Shown: positions 39,401 to 49,429 of the stretch, piece by piece
How positions within the stretch are numbered: the first letter of the stretch is position 1
Layout: the number at the start of each line of letters is the position of its first letter
From: Lepidodermella squamata
Taxonomy: Eukaryota > Animalia > Gastrotricha
Reading direction: 5' to 3'
Length of the DNA: 64,000 nucleotides
Assembly: GCA_047495785.1 (NCBI GenBank)
Contig: JBLDXI010000016.1
Coordinates: 372,001-436,000 of the forward strand
Made by a program: the position numbers and the translations under genes
The notes under the pieces: generated by a model
What the model was told of the DNA's origin: nothing
The model's input: the letters and a program-made list of their open reading frames with translations, nothing else
The model's database searches: none

Positions 39401-41662
39401 TCCCTTTCATTGGCAAAGCCGCTTACTTCATGAGACGTGCCAGGATGCGGCGCCTCAATTGATTCAAAACCTGATCCGTACATAGTATGTACGCGAAAAA
39501 TTTCATTTTGAAACTATGTACGAGTCTACACTGTCACTGTCGATCAATGTTTTGATTGGGCTATGAAACATTGGCAAATAATGGCGGATTTTGAGTGAAT
39601 TCACTGTCTCTCTCGATATTTCTCTCAATTAGGCTATCCACCGGAGTTTGGCGTTTGCTCTTGGAGTGGTAAGCCGCCAACAACTGCCATCTATGTTACA
39701 TGCGTTGACCTTGCCCTATTTTAAAGCCATTCGAGCACACTCGTCGTGATAGAGACTCTTATCTTGACATTATTAATCCAAGGTATGAAAAAGCGCATGC
39801 CCTTTTCATGCCATTCGTTGACAATTATAACTAGAAAATGGAATAACTACTCGCAACCTGATGGCATCAGTGACTACGGGGTGCCATTCGACTACGCCTC
39901 GGCTACGATGGCACATCCACTTGAAGATGGAGGCGATTTCTACCCAAAGGACTGGCGATATGTCAGTGCCATGAACGCCGCATTTCCGTCGTTCAACAAC
40001 CTAAAATATCTAAACTTGATTTACGACTGCATGGGTGAGTTATAGAGCTCTGGTTTTGTTATGAATCGGAGAGATAGGAAATGTTTTCGTGGCAAGCTCC
40101 TGTTTCACTTTACCTATATAATACAATGGTTTTTAAGAAACTCCTATCTTATATAACATTATAGCAAAATGCAATGGTCAGTCTCTGGACTGTAAATATG
40201 GCGGCTATCAAGACCCTAATAATTGCAGCGTTTGCAAATGCCCGCCTGGCTTCGGTGGTCCAACTTGCGAGGCCTTGCCTCCATTCCCAGGTGAAACTTG
40301 CGGGGGTGTCATCAACCTGCAGCCTTGTGTCTCGCAAGTCATCGAATCACCCAACTATCCCAACGGTTACCCTGTTGAAAGCAAATGCTCTTGGCGAGTA
40401 ATCAGCAGCCAGGTTAGAAACGTCATGACTGGCATAGCTCAGGTCTTAAAAAATAACTGATTTTCAGCCTGGCATTGTGATGGGATTCGATGGCAGGCCT
40501 GATCTTACAGTTGGTTCTGGTAGGTTCCTACCATTTTTAGTGGCGACTATTTTTGTGTCAAATAGATGGATTAAAAACATTTAATATAACCGGCACGTTT
40601 TTATCTTCCTTCTGACACAATTCGTAACTTTCTCACATTCACCCATCAATGCATCTACTGTATCTCGCTTGATTCATTATTTCGCAGTGGCTAGCGGTTA
40701 TTCATCACATTACGATGACTCCTGTTACGACTACGTCGAATTTCGCGATCCTATCGACGGCACTAAGCCATACTTCCGATTTTGTTCATACGGCGTTACC
40801 TCGGGCAGAATCTACGAGACCGCTGGCAATACAGCAGTGGTGCATTTCAATGCCAACTCAAACACGACTGCCAATGGATTCCGACTCGTCGTTCGATCCT
40901 GCTCGACCGACAACAAGGTGGAGCTGAGACTGACGACAACTGGCTACGACTACGAAGGCCAAGTTTCGAAAACCAAATCTAACATCACGTGCAAGTCGTG
41001 GCCGGTAGCAGCTGACATTTTAACGAATTGGTATCAGAACTTGCAGTTTCCTCGTGCGCTGGTGAATGAATCGCAGAATTACTGCCGGAATCCCGAATCT
41101 CGCTCGACTGGTGCTTACTGCTTCATCGACGACGCTCGCAACCAGACAGAGTCTTGTGACATTCCGCCAGTTGTGGCCAACGGTGAGATATGTCTTATTG
41201 CTTAATTCTCGATAGCTGAAAAAAACTGATTGATGACTTTGCTCAGGAACCAGCTCGAATCCAGTATCTGATAAGATCCGTTTCCGATGTGGATCCAAAG
41301 CCACCAAGAGATTCACAGCATGCCGTCGCCAGTGCAACAACGCCACTGAATTCACATTCCTCAGCCATGGCACTGTTTACGAAGACAAATGTTCAACAGC
41401 GGTTAGGTTTTGCTACTCTCAAAAAACGTGGTTGCTATTAACAGTATTTTGCGTTTCAGACTACTAGAAAGTGCTACTCGGCTAGCAAAGGCCTCCGATG
41501 TGATGGCAAGTGCAATGATGACGAGTTGGAAGTAAGCCAATTGCCGATTGTCATGAATCTTATTGAAGACTTCTATGCCTTCTGAATTATCAGGTCAACC
41601 GGTACAACAAATACATCCCGTTCGGCAGAAACATCGACTTATGCTTGGGATTGATCCAGTGA
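33425..41662 (+). CDS. Astacin-like gene 3 (multi-exon, inactive astacin-EGF-CUB-kringle-Cys-rich); first exon and 3' end less certain
   Basis: Signal exon MLFSHCYLILSFAFLIYGTATS|gtaagt. Exons from 37608: AWNLPI..HTCIDY..AIHRSLAFALGV|PFEHTRRDRDSY..FDYASATM..LNLIYDC; EGF, CUB, kringle NYCRNP..GAYC..ESC. Confidence 0.78.
34441..34686. mobile_element. hAT-type MITE
   Basis: cagtgtgcga / tcgcaccctg ends; 8-bp TSD TTGAACAT. Confidence 0.85.
35293..36422 (+). mobile_element. Non-autonomous Helitron
   Basis: 5' A|TCTATATTACTAAA; 3' hairpin GGCGCCCGC-TAA-GCGGGCGCC (36389-36409) 9 nt before CTAG|T; no TSD. Confidence 0.75.
36441..36709. repeat. Short hairpin element (36511-36652) inside a ~70-bp direct repeat; a half copy lies in reverse orientation at 26110-26197
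   Basis: atgttataccgtaaaatatcgaatt...ctatatttg at 36441 and 36640; tatggtataacatgagtaaa / tttacgaatgttataccgta imperfect IR. Confidence 0.75.
38137..38532. mobile_element. hAT-like MITE remnant with GGTTAACC repeats
   Basis: gagctgtgccggtcc / ggaccagcacagctc; TSD not resolved. Confidence 0.6.
38893..39079. mobile_element. pogo/Tc1-like MITE
   Basis: TA|cagtgctccctcgataactgcac / gtgcagttatcaagggagcact. Confidence 0.75.
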
Positions 41663-42491: not shown

Positions 42492-42735
42492 GTGTCGGCC
42501 CGAGCACGGCGGAGAACAATAGGAACCAGCGCTATTGTTGGGCACCGCGCTCGGGCCGTCGGGCTCGGGCCTCTGGAATCGGACCGCCGGGCCTGGGTCG
42601 CCGAGCTCGGGTCATCCTACAACCAACGCCCAACCCGATAACTGTATCAAGTCCCGGCCCAAGCCCGGCGGCCCGAAAGCGGCGCCTAACAATAGCGCTG
42701 GTTCCTATTGTTCTCCGCCGTGCTCGGGCCGACAC
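42492..42735. mobile_element. GC-rich foldback MITE
   Basis: ~50-bp perfect IR gtgtcggcccgagcacggcggagaacaataggaaccagcgctattgtt; internal CTCGGGCC repeats. Confidence 0.8.
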
Positions 42736-43080
42736 TGGTGTTTATGAACACTCGGCGCGACTGTCGCATGAAACGCTGATGCGACGGTACGACACGCGAA
42801 AACGTCGGATAGTCTGTGAACAACGACGCGATTTTCGCACCCGACAGTGCGACGGTCGTATGCGAAATATTCGTATCCGAAAATTCGCACATTAGTGAAT
42901 CCACCTTAAGAGTTGGCCTCGCAGTTGGACGAGAATTTCTAAGACTTCCAATGCTTGTGAAACAACTTCTGCTACCTTCCTGGTATTTTAATTAATTACT
43001 CTATACATATATATATATATGACTCTCAACGGCTGGCTCATTTGTTGAATCTTAACCTTGTAAACAGTCACTCGTCTCAT

Positions 43081-43190
43081 CTAAGGCTACTCCTGCTACG
43101 GTCTGGAGATGTATGTTGATTTTGATAATATCTACTAGTATTGATGTAGCACTAAATGACTATCCTCAGGTTGAGCGCAATCCAGGGCCA
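43081..43190 (+). other. 2A/StopGo-like peptide LRLLLLRSGD|VERNPGP split by a 59-nt intron (43111-43169)
   Basis: cta agg cta ctc ctg cta cgg tct gga gat|GTATGT...CCTCAG|gtt gag cgc aat cca ggg cca. Confidence 0.8.
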
Positions 43191-43849
43191 GTGAACGGCG
43201 GCAATCCCCTGCCCGGAAAAATTTGTTTTCAGTCTGTGAAGACAGGGAAGACGTTTGGCGTTGTCCCAGTGGCTTTTCAACCAGGAGCTTCAAGTGTTGC
43301 TACTAGACCTTGGCTAGCAGTTACCTAACAACCTACAGCCTCCGCGCCGGTTGTTCCTAAGGTTAAAAGAGGTAAACCTTGATTTTCGTTACGCATTTGC
43401 CAAAAACATCTACATTGTTAAGTTATTATTAGAAATTGGCGTTGTGCGAATTATGGATGTCGATCCGCCTGTGATCAAATCTGTCATTATCACGCCTGCC
43501 GGAGCAGTGGTCAAGACATCGTCGCAGCAAGTAACCGCTGTCGTCGAGGGAAACCAGCCACCTGCAAAAGATCAGCATCTGCTACCTATTGCTAAATGTT
43601 ACGCTTATCGCAGGATCGTTCGAAAGATGATGAATTTGCGTAAAAATGCGCCTTCCAGTCACAACTACGTTCGAATGTCTGCCGCAAATCGCGTTGCTCC
43701 AACCGAAGTCGGCCGACGTGTTTGTGTTCGATGCGAGGCTTCTAAAAAGATGGTCGCCGACCTATGCCGCCAGGTTCAAGACATGCGTAGTGAAGAGTGC
43801 TTTTATCCGCCGAGTTTGCATCAAATGTAATGCTGCCAAGCAGATAATA

Positions 43850-46635
43850 GGATGGATGGATGGATGGATTTATAAGCCCAATCGCCAGTTGCCCGACGAT
43901 ATGCTTGGGTATCGGTTTGAGAGTTTAGCACCCGAGTCACCGCTGTAGCGATGTTTTACACGGGTCAAGTGGCACAAAGGAGTAGAAAAATAAAAATAAA
44001 TTAGAAAAATAGATTACGGATCTAATAAAATAATATCTTCGAGTTGCTCTTTCGCGAATTCGACGACGTAGGCAGCTTGACGTGTGCTTTTTGACGAGTT
44101 CATTTGCCGGATGAAGTCGGTTGCGCTGTTCCACGCTGCCGTGCCACGATGGAGAACGGTTCGTTGACTAGTGGTGTTGCTGTGGTCAACAGGAAGACAT
44201 CCTTGGGCTTTTTGACGTGTCTCCCTCGCGGCTTCTCTCTTTGTGAAATCAGCGATGAGTAGATCGGGTGCTTCACCATGGAGAATCTGCCAGACCAGTT
44301 TGATGGTGTGAACTTTTCTTCTTCCCGCTAGCGAGATCCAGCGAAGGTCGCGGATGAGGGGTCAACAGAAAAAGTGTCCAGCTTCATCATGAGTGCTCTG
44401 ATTCCGGCGCGCTGGTGCTTTGTCGAGCTTCTTCAAGGCTTTCACGGAACCAGCTTCGAGGAGGATGTCGCAGTAGCCGACGCGAGATTCGATGAGTCCG
44501 TTGTAGATGGCCTTCCGAGCATCCAGGGGAACGCCATTTCGACCAGCTAGGCGGAGAGCATAGGCGCCACTGCGGCATTTTTGCTGCAATGTTTTCGACA
44601 TGGTGTTCGAAAGAGATGCGGTAGTCGATTTCAAGTCCTAGGAGAGTCATTGTAGGTTGTGGAGCGACGAGAATGCCGTTGACGTTCACTTCAGGCAGTT
44701 CGTCGTCAATTTTAAGCAGTTTCGGTGCCAAAAACATTATTTGAGTCTTCTTTTCGTTCAGCCTCAGGCTATTTTACCGGAGCCAAGTTGCTACTGAGGT
44801 TAGTTGTAATTCGAGTTTCGCTTTAACTGAGGAAATTGAGTCACCAGAGGCATAGATAGTGGTATCATCAGCGTATAGGAATATTCCGCAGTCAGGGTCG
44901 GTTACCAGACTTGGTAATTCGTTTACGTAAATGGTGAACAGGAGAGGCCCCAGAACACTCCCTTGAGGGACGCCGTACTTGATGGGTAAAGGTTCAGATG
45001 AAGCATTGCCAAGTCGGACGACTTGTTTCCTGTTATCAAGGTAGTCGCGAAACAACTCGATGGAATTACGATCGAAGCACAATGACTCAAGGGATGCGAG
45101 AACACTCTCGGGGTCTAAATAATGAAATGCTTTTGAGAGGTCCAGGCTGGCGACCACCACGTATTTGTCTTGAGATGCAGCGGTGATCCACCTGTCGAGC
45201 TGAGCTTCGATGCAGCTGACGGTGTTATGGAATTTGCGGAAACCAAATTGCCTTTGCGAGAGAAGCTTGTGAGTGTTCAGGTGGTTTTTCACTTGGGCAC
45301 TGACGCAGCGCTCGAAGAGTTTTAGAGCTGAGGGCAGGATGGAGATGGGGCGGAAATTCGACGGTTCGCCCTTGTCACCGTTTTTGTGGATCGGTGTGAC
45401 GAAGCTCGTTTTCCATACGTCGGGAATCTGTTTTTCCTCGATGATCTTGTTGAAGAGTTTGACGTAGGCTTTCCTGATGTCGTCGTCTTCAAGAGCGTCA
45501 CGTATGCCATCGGCGCCAGTGGTCTTCTTAGTTGAGAGTTTCTTGGCGTTCAAAATGATGTCTTGTTCTGCGATGGCGCGCAGTGAGAATAGCTTGGCAT
45601 CTTGCCGTGATCTGATGAAATTAGGCAGCGGAAGAGATCGTGCTACTAGTTCACCGACCGACACGAAGTGTATTGGTTCAGCTTTTTGCAGGTGTCGATG
45701 GCGGTTTCCGGATCGATGGCATCGTGTTGTTTTTTTGGCGGAAGAAAATCTCTCAGAACAACCCAGATTTCTCGAGGATCACCTTTCGCGTCTTTGAATC
45801 GTCTCGCGTAGTATTCACGACTCCACTGTCTCGTCAGCCTGCGAACTTCTGATTTGGCTTTTTTAAAGCGAGCGATCGCGGTGGCAGTAGAGTTCTCAGC
45901 GTTTGCGCGCTCGGATGCTGCTTTTTCCCGTATTCCTTTGAGCAAGGTCGAGCCAGCTTCGCTGGATGGATCGAGGTTCAGTCGGTTTCCTTTCTTCCCG
46001 TTAGCTCCAGGTTTTATGGTGATCTCCTTCTTTGGAGCGATAATGTCAAGAGTCTCGGTTAGGCTTTCAACCAGATGGCGTTCCAGTTCATAAGCAGTGG
46101 CATCTTCGCGTATAACTTTTTTGAGCAGTTTCTGGCTTGCCATCGCTGTGCAGACAGTAGATGTGTAGCCCTTGAAAATTCGAACGGTTGTTTTGAATGA
46201 TTTAGATAGCTCCACTATGGTGTTGACTACTGAGGCAGTTCCGAAGTGATCCGATAGACCAGGTACGGTGGCTGACGCTAATGTGATATCAGTTGACACA
46301 AATGTGGTCTAGGCAGGTTCGGGATGCTGGTCTGGTGATCGTGTAATCTTCGGTGATGTGGAAGCCGAGTGAGGAAGTTATGCTACTGAGTGAGTTGGAG
46401 AGCTTAGGTTCAAGGGTGTTGATGTTGGAATCTCCGTGTATGACGATTTGATAGCCGGTTTTATTTTCAAGATTGATTTTTACCAATAGAGAGGCGATTT
46501 CATCCTTCCAATTAGGATGATCAGGAGGCCTGTAGATTGAATATACTCTAACTATTCCTTTTTCGTTTTAATGTCAGCGAAGATGTTTTCGATAGAATGT
46601 TCGATAAAGCCGAAGCGGACGACGGACGACGCGGA
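43850..46635 (-). mobile_element. 5'-truncated CR1/L2-group LINE (APE endonuclease C-half + RT), frameshifted
   Basis: IYRPP, HGDSN, CLDHI, SDH; NFRPISIL, QFGFR, LDLSKAF, GVPQGSVLGPLLF, YADDT; 3' stem-loop then ATAAA(TCCA)n tail ending at ~43850. Confidence 0.92.
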
Positions 46636-49095
46636 TCGATTTTTTCACGAGTTTTTGACCTTTCTAGAGGAGCAAATTAAAGATTCCATTGATCCGGGCT
46701 CATATCGATTTGGTCTCATTTCTCTGGACGCAACGGCTATTTCATCAGGTCTCGAAATCATCGATGAAGGCAACACGATAGTTGGAATGAGCCTAGATGA
46801 ACCTGGAACGCCTGCATCTCAGTGTATTTCGATTGTTCTTAAATTTGTTGAAAACGTAACAGTCCTAAACATTGCTAACTATCCTATGGTCAACATGCCC
46901 GTGAATATGATATCGCTGTTTTTGAAGAAACCATCGAGCGACTTTATCGATAATCCACTCCAATCACTGTGATTGCCGCAACATGGGACGGGGCAGGTGA
47001 AAATTGGTCGTTGTTCAACGGACTTCGGGAAAAATTCGGCCTGGGAGGTTATCCCCATCCGTTTGCTGATGGTGTCGTCGTCCACCTTTTTTTCGACCCG
47101 CCGCACGTTTTGAAAATTTGCAGAAACGCCATAGTGCATAAAATGGTGAGTACTTCATTTTCTTATCATTTTCATCAGTTACATGAAGTACAGAATGGTC
47201 CAAATTGGTCCCGAATTATTAGAAAGCGAAATTGATTAGAGATAAGCGCGTGGTATTTATGAGCGGGGGCCAACATTCAGACAATCACTCAACATTTTTT
47301 GTAAAATAAAGGTCAGCTGGTAAAATTCCAGGTAAAATCTCGTGGCTTCATATTTCTATCCCACGGTTACCTGTATTTTTTTCTGGAATTTATGAGATTT
47401 TCTAGGAATTATGCAAAACAAGCCTAAATCCGATCAATTTTTTCCAGTGATCTTAATTTTACAGCTGTCGATAGATTTCGCGAAGATTGATTTCAGCGGA
47501 TTTTCTGCAGTTATGGAAATGAAGCTGCTTGATCTGTTTCCGAAGACCGGCATCGGCCGGGTTAACTTTCGATACATCGTTGAAATTTACGAGCGAGATA
47601 AAAATCGTCTCCTTCAACGCAGCACACGATTGAACAGCCATATGGTATACACAGTGCAACAAAAAAATGCCGCGCAGAAAATGAATGTAGCCTATGCTGC
47701 TCGAACTCTATCACGCTCGGTGGCGATTGAGATTTTATACTCGCACCCGGGCGATATCGAAGTACTATCGCTGCTACTGCATTTTTCTGCCTGCTACTCG
47801 ATGCATGGTTTGACTGCATGAATGGCGAGAGTAATATTGAGGGTAACATGGCAGTTGAAAAATACATCTATAAGCCGAACCTTGCTCCTTATGAAAGTCC
47901 CCTCGATAAGCGGCTGATCTGGCTCATCGATGTGTTGGTCCCCTTCATTGAACAGGTTCATATGGATAATAAGGTGGACAAATCAACCTTGTCATGGCAG
48001 GTCATCGTGCTTTGGTCGAAACCTCTACGAATATGGGGAAGCTGACCAACTTCGCCTTGCTAAGAGGCGTTCGACAATTTTTCCCTGCGCGTGCCAACCA
48101 GGACCACAACGAAATGGTTTTCAATCAGCTTCGAAGGGACGGCAATTCCTCCAAATCGAACCCGACGTTTCGTGCGATACAAGGCAGGGCGAGTAAGCTC
48201 AGGATTTGCTGTGGCCACTGGAGCGTATCGCATGGCGCAAACGTTCAAATTCGCAGTGCCATCACCACCATATCAATCGCGACTGCTCGTAAATTGAAAA
48301 AGATTTCTAGGCAGAGGGCGAAATTAAACGGCCTTCATCGAATCTATTTGCCAGATCATCTTGAATTCGACCATAATACAGTGGCCTGGGTCGCCGGCTT
48401 TATCACGCGCAAACTAGAGTTTGAAGCCCGCAAATGCGTATTTCAGCGAATACGTTGATCTCAGATCTAGGGGCGGGGCTTGCCAACCGAATGCCGATGT
48501 GCTCGCTATTGTCAAATTAGCCTTGTCCAAAGCTTATCGAAACGACCTCATAACCGAAAAAGATTTGCAACCGCTGTCTAAAAAGCTGGGTGATAATCTG
48601 ACCCGGCTACAGGACAAAACATGTGGCGTGTTGCTGAAAGTAAAATTCATGTTGGCGCGTCGAACGGTTCGTTTTTACCGGGATAAATTTGGCGCTTCAA
48701 CCTTGGCTCTTAGAGCCAGCTTGAAAAGATTTAAAAAAGACTGAATTTCGTGTGTTTGTGTCAAATAATATCTCAAGCAATTATTTAAAATCGAGAAACT
48801 TGGGGGTCGAAATTTTTTTTTTGAGAGAACATGTGCTATTGCTCCGTTTCAGCCCAATAAATTATTTTCGTTTTTGAACAATGTCTTTTCGAAGAGTGAA
48901 AAATGATTCATCGTGGTTTTTTGAATGGCGCGATTTGCTGAGAATCACTAGCAATGGTTTACCAAACGTTGGTATGGCAAATATTTAATGAGATGATTCA
49001 TCACATTAAATTTGAAAATATGAACTTTGCCCCTTATTAGCCTGACTTCAGTTTTTCGCGTCCGAAAACCTCTTAGTGCGGCGTCCTATCTACGT

Positions 49096-49429
49096 CACAT
49101 GACACATGGCTGATTTAATCATGGCCATTTTTATTCAACAACAGAGCATCCATTTCGCTTTGACGCACGTGCCGGTCTTTAGCTTGCCGTATGTTATTAT
49201 CCAATTATCCATTATCTAATAAAAATTAATAGTCATTATCCAACCGGCTTGCCGGCTTTAAGCTATATCATTAAAGCGGCCGTCAACCTCTAGAAGAGAA
49301 AGTGTGAACGTATCACATGACGTATCAATGGCATACGGCAAGCTAAAGACCGGCAAGTGCGTCAAAGCGAAATGGATGCTCTGTTGTTGAATAAAAATGG
49401 CCATGGTTAAATCAGCCATGTGTAATGTG
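49096..49429. mobile_element. Foldback MITE with ~100-bp TIRs
   Basis: acacatggctgattta..gcttgccgtatg is inverted as catacggcaagc..aatcagccatgtgt; TSD not resolved. Confidence 0.8.

What the first reader, a model, noticed from the sequence alone, without database searches (positions are those of the whole stretch)
42951..43371. Intron-split 2A (StopGo) ribosome-skipping motif ahead of a P-like transposase
Seen: removing a canonical 59-nt phase-0 intron (GTATGT...CCTCAG, 43111-43169) joins LRLLLLRSGD to VERNPGP, a perfect GDVExNPGP consensus with the usual Leu-rich tract. It is invisible in the six-frame track. A second plausible intron (42983-43067) links it to an upstream Met (MLVKQLLLPSC|HSSH..), and a third (from ~43372) links it to the downstream coding block. 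Known: 2A-like motifs occur in RNA viruses, in APE-type non-LTR retrotransposons and at the N-termini of some invertebrate genes, and Drosophila P transposase is controlled by regulated splicing. Inference: a DNA-transposon gene in which splicing assembles a translational skip signal, since intron retention shifts frame and destroys the motif. This would be a splicing-gated StopGo switch. This copy is decayed (TAA at ~43326, LINE insertion), and the link to the transposase is positional.
Basis: partly seen in the sequence, partly recalled or inferred. Interest (0 to 1): 0.85.

Follow-up and report, generated by a model that had tools for sequence, protein, structure and literature searches.

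The report
Intron-split 2A leader of P transposon
The window holds a dead copy of a P-type "cut-and-paste" DNA transposon whose family places a virus-style 2A ribosome-skipping peptide, readable only after a short intron is spliced out, between a small hydrophobic leader protein and the transposase. I found no report of this arrangement for DNA transposons, and no RNA data exist to prove the splice.

Summary
Removing the 59-nt GT..AG intron at 43111-43169 joins ..LRLLLLRSGD to VERNPGP.

It is not chance:
- The same phase-0 intron between GD and (V/I)(E/Q)xNPGP sits ahead of eight P-type elements on other contigs. It survives where the introns themselves are about 50% identical.
- Genome-wide, acceptor-preceded motifs number 11, against 0 in the control.
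- In copies C4 and C29 the exon that starts with VE(R/S)NPGP runs in one open frame into the P transposase domains, so the link is by reading frame.

The family is a genuine, recently mobile P-superfamily transposon. It has ~28-bp TIRs starting CATGAG, 8-bp target duplications and two 99.9% identical copies.

In intact copies a 110-185-aa hydrophobic ORF splices in frame (phase 2) onto the 2A exon, which gives leader protein, 2A, then transposase.

The window copy is a relic. It has no left TIR, a TAA at 43326, a non-LTR insertion and possibly chimeric halves.

The "splicing-gated switch" is unsupported. Retaining the intron ends the whole ORF, not only the skip. No RNA run exists for this organism, so neither splicing nor skipping has been shown.

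The scan flagged the same design on other pieces of this genome.

The parts
42914..42982 (+). It holds the ATG at 42952 and ends ..CCTTCCTG before the donor GTATTT, in phase 2.
   Evidence: Similarity to the C4 copy begins about here (MAFFT alignment; the blastn hit itself starts at 43042). The frame is open upstream of the ATG in both copies, which differ by an in-frame 9-nt indel. Sequence upstream of ~42914 is an unrelated high-copy repeat.
42983..43067 (+). Intron 1, 85 nt, GTATTT..AAACAG, phase 2.
   Evidence: The equivalent phase-2 intron is present in C4, C29, C66, C24, C25 and C46, at 53-87 nt.
43068..43110 (+). Exon 2, 43 nt, encoding (C)HSSHLRLLLLRSGD, the upstream half of the 2A-like peptide.
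   Evidence: Exon-2 lengths in the four subfamilies (43, 58, 37, 85 nt) all leave remainder 1 on division by 3, as the phase 2 to phase 0 model requires.
43111..43169 (+). Intron 2, 59 nt, GTATGT..CCTCAG, phase 0, lying exactly between GD and VE of the motif.
   Evidence: The position is conserved in every P-type copy that has the motif. Retention gives a frameshift and stops.
43170..43371 (+). Exon 3, encoding VERNPGP VNGGNPLPGKICFQSVKTGK.., with a disabling TAA at 43326-43328.
   Evidence: C4 has ACA where the window has TAA. Within RLLLLRSGDVERNPGP all three window/C4 differences are synonymous.
43372..43432 (+). Intron 3, 61 nt, GTAAAC..TATTAG, phase 1.
   Evidence: It is conserved in C4 (GTAAGA..TATTAG).
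43433..43850 (+). [quoted passage not shown] Homology breaks at a (GGAT)n run.
   Evidence: It is 85% identical to C4 in both nucleotides and amino acids. In C4 this exon continues without a stop into the RNase H-like domain.
44362..46486 (-). Non-LTR retrotransposon (LINE) fragment inserted into the element.
   Evidence: RVT_1 scores 1.2e-29 on ORF 44774-45664(-).
46571..47235 (+). Transposase remnant, RNase H-like N part (..LISLDATAISSG.., ..ATWDGAGENW..), spread over two frames.
   Evidence: tblastn to the C29, C66, C25 and C24 copies gives 67-78% amino-acid identity (100% over one 13-residue C24 fragment), and 62% to C4. In the C29 paralog (SLDAM, WDGAGEN) these two Asp motifs align with AFDEM and VSDLG of Drosophila P transposase 6p5a; the window has the same motifs by eye.
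47411..47821 (+). Transposase remnant, GTP-binding insertion domain.
   Evidence: PF21788 TNP-like_GBD, 2.1e-06, above the gathering score.
47994..48744 (+). Transposase remnant, C-terminal region in two overlapping frames, ending ..LKRFKKD and a stop.
   Evidence: PF21789 scores weakly. Identity to the C-terminal ORFs of C29, C66 and C46 is 57-62%.
49075..49101 (-). Right terminal inverted repeat, CATGTGACGTAGATAGGACGCCGCACT.
   Evidence: It matches the family TIR pattern with 2 mismatches, with 0 expected by chance. No left TIR is found in the window at up to 3 mismatches.

Best explanation
Window ~42914-49101 is a dead relic of an autonomous P-superfamily DNA transposon. It is 5'-truncated, carries a stop codon and is interrupted by a LINE.

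In intact family members one multi-exon gene appears to encode a polyprotein with three parts:
- a small, fast-evolving hydrophobic leader protein of about 110-185 aa with at least one TM-like segment;
- a 2A/StopGo-like peptide, ..LLL(R/Q)(S/C)GD|(V/I)(E/Q)xNPG, followed by P;
- a transposase of about 900 aa with a P-element HTH domain and an RNase H-like core carrying a GTP-binding insertion domain, but no THAP domain.

A conserved phase-0 intron lies between GD and VE, so the motif exists only in spliced mRNA.

Inferred mechanism: at NPG|P the ribosome releases the leader and carries on, producing a free transposase that starts with Pro. Molecules that fail to skip would stay fused to the hydrophobic leader and could be kept on membranes, away from the nucleus. 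Unspliced RNA ends a few codons after GD and cannot yield transposase.

What is shown: the sequence anatomy, its conservation across copies, the reading-frame link to the transposase, and the transposon identity. What is inferred: the splicing itself, the skipping, and the fate of the fusion.
For: Motif and introns:
- They are as described in the window.
- The same split occurs in C4 (VERNPGP), C29 (VESNPGP), C66/C24 (VQSNPGP) and C25/C46 (IQLNPGP). C60 carries the same motif string as C25/C46. Splice ends are canonical, and intron sequences are diverged to about 50% identity.
- There are 11 acceptor-preceded motifs against 0 in the control, and 0 unsplit GDVExNPGP.
- Within the 2A core, window and C4 differ only at synonymous sites: 3 synonymous, 0 nonsynonymous.

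Link to the transposase:
- The C29 exon starting VESNPGP is a 473-codon ORF with Tnp_P_element HTH and TNP-like_RNaseH_N. The next ORF has TNP-like_GBD.
- That ORF aligns to Drosophila P transposase 6p5a, with both Asp motifs aligned.

Transposon identity:
- TIRs of ~28 bp start CATGAG and occur at 148 sites against 0 in the control.
- Target-site duplications are 8 bp at C25 and C46.
- C25 and C46 are 99.9% identical over 4.4 kb and have different flanks.

Upstream ORF:
- It joins the 2A exon in frame through a phase-2 intron in C66/C24, C29, C25/C46 and C4.
- Exon-2 lengths all leave remainder 1 on division by 3.
- Hydrophobic segments reach a Kyte-Doolittle 19-residue mean of 2.0-2.9.

Precedent:
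- N-terminal 2A-like leaders that also act as signal sequences are known (PMC4981915).
- 2A-like sequences sit at the N-terminal region of non-LTR retrotransposon ORFs (PMC3708506).
Against: - No RNA run exists for this organism. The only run found behaves as DNA and holds the region unspliced. No transcript-derived protein was found. Splicing therefore rests on comparison of copies alone.
- The most recently mobile copies (C25/C46, C66/C24) have Q in place of the key Glu. Core residues of 2A are largely intolerant to change in mammalian reporters (bioRxiv 10.64898/2026.09.24.754024), and Nematostella non-LTR variants with changes at this Glu were inactive where tested (PMC3708506). Skipping may be weak, or not needed for transposition.
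- The upstream hydrophobic ORFs are barely alignable between subfamilies: C66 against C46 gives E 0.01, and C66 against C4 gives nothing. In C29 the ORF is split by a ~0.9-kb insertion.
- The C7 copy shows no NPGP within 4 kb upstream.
- The one close outside relative lacks the motif.
Confidence: 0.62

Rival explanations
1. The exons are real and spliced, but the 2A-like sequence no longer skips, or never did. On this reading it is kept as the end of a hydrophobic signal or anchor leader, or as a linker, and the transposase is made as a fusion or from an internal start.
For: - E is replaced by Q in C66/C24 and C25/C46, and C25/C46 include the youngest copies.
- Nematostella non-LTR 2A-like sequences carry changes at this Glu (E to S, A or I, and ES to QL), and the two such sequences tested were inactive (PMC3708506).
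- C29 has an in-frame Met just after NPGP and another just before the Leu tract.
Against: - NPGP is invariant in all copies, and GD(V/I) is kept across subfamilies whose flanking residues and introns have diverged freely.
- Window, C4 and C29 meet the full (G/H)D(V/I)ExNPGP core.
- Some single-substitution 'Class X' cores are active (bioRxiv 10.64898/2026.09.24.754024).
Confidence: 0.22
2. One reading: a regulated, splicing-gated StopGo switch. Controlled retention of the intron inside the motif would decide, by tissue or by germline, whether the skip signal and thus active transposase are made. This would be analogous to IVS3 control of the Drosophila P element.
For: - The intron sits exactly inside the motif in every copy, and the motif is absent from unspliced RNA.
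- From general knowledge, P elements are a classic case of splicing control.
Against: - Retention frameshifts into stops within a few codons, so it ends the whole ORF. Any coding intron would do the same, and introns 1 and 3 have that effect too.
- No conserved intronic element is visible. Intron 2 is 47-59% identical between subfamilies, which is close to unconstrained.
- No expression data exist.
Confidence: 0.1
3. The predicted splicing is spurious. The hydrophobic ORF would then be a separate upstream gene ending at its TAA, the NPGP string would be an untranslated or chance relic (for example a captured retrotransposon fragment), and the transposase would start elsewhere.
For: - In every copy the upstream ORF meets a TAA at or just past the proposed donor (..GG|GTAA in intact copies).
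- No RNA evidence exists.
Against: - That TAA is part of the donor consensus.
- The frame is preserved across two introns in four subfamilies despite different exon and intron lengths.
- The transposase exon has no conserved ATG, and in C4, C29 and C66 a stop lies immediately before V.
- The motif is kept by synonymous-only change.
Confidence: 0.06

Closest known systems
N-terminal 2A-like signal sequences of Strongylocentrotus purpuratus NLR proteins (Roulston et al. 2016, PMC4981915)
   Same: A short hydrophobic, Leu-rich leader ends in D(V/I)ExNPGP at the head of a cellular ORF. Skipping and fusion give differently targeted products, which is the dual-targeting idea used here.
   Different: Here the motif heads a DNA transposase, follows a longer 110-185-aa hydrophobic ORF, and is split by an intron. 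No activity or localisation was measured.
2A-like sequences in APE-type non-LTR retrotransposons (Odon et al. 2013, PMC3708506; L1Tc/Ingi)
   Same: A mobile element uses 2A in the N-terminal region of its enzyme ORF. Natural variants at the key Glu occur, including an ES to QL variant in Nematostella that recalls the IQLNPGP of C25/C46.
   Different: Those are class I elements without introns. This is a class II (P superfamily) element with the motif interrupted by a spliceosomal intron.
Drosophila P element and THAP9-type transposases (PDB 6p5a)
   Same: TIRs begin CATGA.., target duplications are 8 bp, and the gene is multi-exon. The RNase H-like core carries a GTP-binding insertion domain, there is a P-element HTH domain, and both Asp motifs align.
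   Different: Pfam detects no THAP domain. A hydrophobic leader ORF and a 2A-like peptide precede the transposase. None of the 150 best-scoring relatives among 1.84 billion representative proteins contains NPGP.
Viral class A 2A peptides (FMDV F2A, T2A, P2A)
   Same: The core GDVExNPGP has an upstream Leu-rich tract and is placed between two protein-coding parts of one ORF.
   Different: The host is a DNA element in an animal nucleus, and the coding sequence is discontinuous in the genome.

Membership tests
Class A 2A / StopGo peptide | C-terminal core (G/H)D(V/I)ExNPGP | tested here: met
   The spliced window product reads RSGD|VERNPGP. C4 is the same, and C29 reads RSGD|VESNPGP. The core is not met at the Glu in C66/C24 (VQSNPGP) or C25/C46 (IQLNPGP).
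Class A 2A / StopGo peptide | Suitable upstream tract (hydrophobic or Leu-rich, about 10-20 aa) in the same ORF | tested here: met
   The tracts are LRLLLL, ATLLL and ISLLLL immediately upstream, with 77-216 open codons before NPG.
Class A 2A / StopGo peptide | The motif is contiguous in the translated mRNA | not testable with these tools
   This requires splicing of intron 2. No RNA run exists, the DNA-like run shows the unspliced locus, and no transcript-derived protein was found. Only comparative support is available.
Class A 2A / StopGo peptide | Co-translational separation at NPG|P in a eukaryotic translation system | not testable with these tools
   This needs a reporter assay.
P-superfamily DNA transposon | Terminal inverted repeats and an 8-bp target-site duplication | tested here: met
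   Family: ~28-bp TIRs and 8-bp TSDs at C25 and C46 (9 bp at C29), with 148 TIR sites against 0 in the control. Window copy: right TIR only.
P-superfamily DNA transposon | Transposase with P-element HTH, an RNase H-like core split by a GTP-binding insertion domain, and catalytic Asp residues | tested here: met
   PF12017, PF21787 and PF21788 score above their gathering scores in C29. PF21788 is found in the window remnant. Alignment to 6p5a places both Asp motifs. The third catalytic residue was not checked.
P-superfamily DNA transposon | N-terminal THAP DNA-binding domain | tested here: not met
   Pfam gives no THAP hit in any exon tested. Not all P-like transposases carry one, so this does not exclude membership of the superfamily.

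The most novel reading that the evidence does not exclude
In this compact animal genome, DNA transposons of several superfamilies have adopted viral-type 2A ribosome skipping. P elements are shown here, and MULE-type elements carry unsplit 2A-like leaders. According to other unchecked scan notes a Helitron does the same. On this reading each element expresses a small membrane protein and its transposase from one mRNA. In the P family the motif is deliberately interrupted by an intron, so only properly spliced element transcripts can make free, nucleus-competent transposase. Read-through or unspliced RNA makes none, and non-skipped product stays tethered to membranes. Together these would form a built-in dosage and compartment control of transposition.
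Probability: 0.3. Interest if true: 0.85.

Novelty: new variant of a known kind. Interest (0 to 1): 0.7.

Why it matters
2A/StopGo is known from RNA viruses, non-LTR retrotransposons and a few invertebrate genes. In the paper library available here, no paper links NPGP-type 2A to a natural DNA transposase or describes a 2A motif split by an intron. A 2026 survey still describes eukaryotic examples as sporadic and retrotransposon-based.

If the splice and the skip are real, three things follow:
- Class II elements can run a polyprotein strategy.
- Motif searches on genomic ORFs systematically miss 2A signals that are assembled by splicing.
- There is a natural system for asking what a membrane leader does for a transposase.

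It would also supply new natural 2A variants (x = R; E to Q) to test.

Tried and rejected
- RNA evidence. The look-up of sequencing runs returned only one run, not on record as RNA, holding 85% of the words of the C29 element. Laid on 42700-44400, it gave a 574-nt contig identical to 42882-43455 with both introns present and no joint at 43110/43170. It behaves as DNA, so it says nothing about splicing.
- Transcript-derived proteins. A HMMER scan of 1.84 billion representatives and a word-based scan of 5.8 billion proteins found one close relative (P0001, 55-56% identity). None of the 150 best hits contains NPGP.
- The contig that encodes P0001 (L055) starts with a related TIR but has no NPGP. 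Its first coding exon could not be aligned convincingly to the post-2A exon. I therefore do not claim that its start codon is positionally equivalent to the Pro after NPG.
- Left end of the window copy. No left TIR is found at up to 3 mismatches, and there is no similarity to the 5' regions of C66, C29 or C46. Sequence upstream of ~42914 is unrelated high-copy repeat.
- Homology of the upstream hydrophobic ORFs. There is no Pfam hit and the Atlas gives only generic membrane-like hits below 0.9. BLASTP is marginal between C66 and C46 and finds nothing against C4 or the MULE leader. A shared origin for the leaders is not shown.
- Taxonomic placement. The Atlas search with the kringle/CUB exon was uninformative.
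Copies were only compared.

Full report
**1. The observation**

- Exon 2 (43068-43110) encodes (C)HSSHLRLLLLRSGD.
- A 59-nt intron follows (43111-43169, GTATGT..CCTCAG).
- Exon 3 starts at 43170 with VERNPGPVNGG...
- The other two proposed introns also have canonical ends and the right phases. Intron 1 is 42983-43067 (85 nt, phase 2). Intron 3 is 43372-43432 (61 nt, phase 1) and joins exon 3 in frame to ..EIGVVRIMDVDPP...
- A TAA interrupts exon 3 at 43326-43328.

**2. Is it chance?**

No.
- The window is contig C16 (372001-436000) of a 121-Mb, 151-contig animal genome.
- An uninterrupted GDVExNPGP coding string occurs nowhere in that genome.
- VExNPGP occurs 12 times, against 0 for the reversed control.
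- The acceptor-preceded form AG|(V/I)(E/Q)xNPG occurs 11 times against 0.
- Eight of those eleven sites belong to P-type elements: C16, C4, C29, C66, C24, C25, C46 and C60. All but C60 lie a few hundred bases upstream of P-type transposase homology. C60 lies inside a 2.2-kb TIR pair and was not inspected.

In each of the seven copies modelled, the upstream exon ends ..GGNGAT followed by GT, and the next exon begins right after AG. The spliced junctions are:

| Copy | Junction |
|---|---|
| C16, C4 | RSGD / VERNPGP |
| C29 | RSGD / VESNPGP |
| C66, C24 | RSGD / VQSNPGP |
| C25, C46 | QCGD / IQLNPGP |

- Intron 2 measures 59, 59, 53, 56, 56, 64 and 64 nt. None is a multiple of three, and all have in-frame stops if retained.
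- Between subfamilies the introns are only 43-59% identical, so the junction is conserved while the intron sequence is not.
- Between the window and C4, the three differences inside RLLLLRSGDVERNPGP are all synonymous. The rest of exons 2-3 has 12 synonymous and 16 nonsynonymous codon differences.

**3. The link to the transposase**

- In C29 the exon beginning VESNPGP is one 473-codon open frame. It contains the Tnp_P_element HTH and TNP-like RNase H N domains.
- After a short intron, a 437-codon frame follows with the TNP-like GTP-binding insertion domain.
- The first frame aligns to Drosophila P transposase (6p5a). SLDAM aligns with AFDEM, and WDGAGEN aligns with VSDLGTGN.
- In C4 the exon after intron 3 runs for 489 codons into the same domains.
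- The motif is therefore tied to the transposase by reading frame, not just by position.

**4. What the element is**

- Comparing copies defines ends with ~28-bp terminal inverted repeats, CATGAGACGTAG(C/G)TAGGACGCCGCAGCT.
- Target-site duplications are 8 bp at C25 (AAGTTAAG) and C46 (CAAATTTC). C29 has 9 bp, and C66 has no matching duplication.
- C25 and C46 are 99.9% identical over 4.4 kb but sit in different flanks. Transposition was therefore recent.
- The TIR pattern occurs 148 times against 0 in the control. Many sites are pairs 0.4-2 kb apart, which indicates short internally deleted derivatives.
- The 2A exons lie 1.3-2.5 kb inside the left TIR, so they are part of the mobile unit.
- Pfam finds no THAP domain.

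**5. A new point: the upstream ORF**

- In C66/C24 a 111-codon ORF starting with ATG ends at ..CTCGG followed by GTAAAT. Splicing to the acceptor ..ATACAG, whose next base is C, continues in frame into YFKATLLLRSGD.
- The same phase-2 join holds in C29 (..CGCGG, GTAATT to ..TTTCAG, then T) and in C25/C46 (..TTCCG, GTAAAT to ..AACAG, then A).
- Exon-2 lengths are 43, 58, 37 and 85 nt. All leave remainder 1 on division by three, as this model requires.
- The upstream ORFs are strongly hydrophobic, with Kyte-Doolittle 19-residue means up to 2.0-2.9.
- They have no Pfam family and are barely alignable between subfamilies.
- The window's 'exon 1' ends in the same phase (..TCCTG, then GTATTT). Its frame is open upstream of the ATG at 42952. 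Window and C4 differ there by an in-frame 9-nt indel. In C4 the frame extends to a hydrophobic 129-aa product.
- The design looks like hydrophobic leader protein, then 2A, then transposase.

**6. State of the window copy**

- Homology to C4 starts near 42914. Upstream lies an unrelated high-copy repeat containing an 80-nt inverted repeat.
- There is no left TIR.
- Homology breaks again at a (GGAT)n run near 43850.
- A non-LTR reverse-transcriptase fragment occupies 44362-46486 on the minus strand.
- The transposase remnants at 46571-48744 are spread over several frames.
- The right TIR is at 49075-49101.
- The 5' block is 85% identical to C4. The 3' block is closer to the C29, C66 and C25 types (57-78% amino-acid identity) than to C4 (about 60%). 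The two halves may therefore come from different elements or from a recombinant.

**7. Expression**

- The only public run found for this organism is not on record as RNA.
- Laid on 42700-44400, it gave a contig identical to 42882-43455 with both introns present. Depth was single-copy (about 35) between repeats at depths of hundreds to thousands. There was no joint at 43110/43170.
- Protein databases hold one close relative (P0001, 55-56% identity). Its contig has a related TIR but no NPGP. None of the 150 best hits has NPGP.
- Splicing and skipping remain inferences from comparison of copies.

**8. Mechanism**

The most likely mechanism (about 0.6):
- Spliced mRNA encodes one ORF.
- At NPG|P the ribosome releases the hydrophobic leader and continues, making transposase that begins with Pro.
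- Product that is not skipped stays attached to the leader, in the manner of the dual-targeting 2A signal sequences of sea-urchin NLRs (PMC4981915).

The main caveat:
- The youngest copies have Q at the Glu position.
- Core residues of 2A are largely intolerant to change in mammalian reporters, although G11 to N, V13 to I and the x position are tolerated and some single-substitution cores are active (bioRxiv 10.64898/2026.09.24.754024).
- Nematostella non-LTR variants with changes at this Glu were inactive where tested (PMC3708506).

The 'splicing-gated switch' is not supported as such:
- Retention ends the whole ORF.
- Introns 1 and 3 would have the same effect.
- No conserved intronic element is visible.

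**9. Context and novelty**

- Unsplit 2A-like leaders in this genome (..LLLANDVEMNPGP..LLQSGNVEMNPGP) precede FAR1/MULE/ZSWIM-type transposase fragments. In one of these families a multi-TM open frame lies upstream.
- Other notes from this scan report the same split motif in further P copies, a Helitron and a single-copy gene. I did not check those loci.
- The searchable literature has no paper linking an NPGP-type 2A to a natural DNA transposase, or describing an intron-split 2A.
- I class this as a new variant of known kinds: a known recoding signal in a known transposon superfamily, in a new arrangement.
- Interest is high at the family level. This particular locus is a relic.

Noticed in passing
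L037 (G000:C48:947929-950948), also L035, L038, L039 and L028: An unsplit 2A-like leader (..HHRVLLLANDVEMNPGP) follows a multi-TM open frame. Downstream lie FAR1-like and MULE/ZSWIM RNase H-like transposase fragments. At least five copies exist on different contigs.
   Followed up: partly
L029, L033, L036 (G000:C3:918598, C24:4672358, C42:1017009): A second unsplit variant, ..FYVLLQSGNVEMNPGP (Asn in place of Asp), heads another MULE/ZSWIM-type transposase. The three copies are nearly identical.
   Followed up: partly
L031 (G000:C11:1196954-1196973, minus strand): ..LKLIHDDVEHNPGP lies in a short 77-codon open frame of unknown context.
   Followed up: no
G000:C1:4939549, C9:3393278(-), C28:109310: Three more acceptor-preceded I-E-x-NPG sites are not near the P-type transposase hits.
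   Followed up: no
window 42492-42735: An 80-nt inverted repeat (93% complementary, 84 nt apart) lies inside a GC-rich stretch that the DNA run covers at depth 700-4600. It is a high-copy foldback or MITE-like repeat that abuts the truncated left side of the P copy.
   Followed up: partly
window 44362-46486 (-): A non-LTR retrotransposon fragment has an RVT_1 domain (1.2e-29) and an upstream 217-aa ORF. It is inserted between the two halves of the P copy.
   Followed up: partly
window 40669-41205 (+): A host exon encodes a kringle domain (2.8e-15) and a partial CUB domain just upstream of the repeat cluster.
   Followed up: no
genome-wide: The window's TIR variant CATGTGACGTAGATAGGACGC recurs as many inverted pairs about 420 bp apart. 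These look like a MITE-like non-autonomous family. No intact autonomous copy with this TIR variant and the window's 5' region was found.
   Followed up: partly
L052 (G000:C29:3635450-3641400): The C29 element is flanked by a 9-bp direct repeat (ACCCAGCCC) rather than 8 bp. A ~0.9-kb insertion splits its upstream hydrophobic ORF, although its transposase frames are intact.
   Followed up: partly
L055 (Logan contig of SRR21620664): The only close outside relative (55-56% amino-acid identity) starts with the TIR CATGTGACCTACCCAGGACGC. It has no NPGP and no long hydrophobic ORF in the ~690 bp before its first coding exon.
   Followed up: partly
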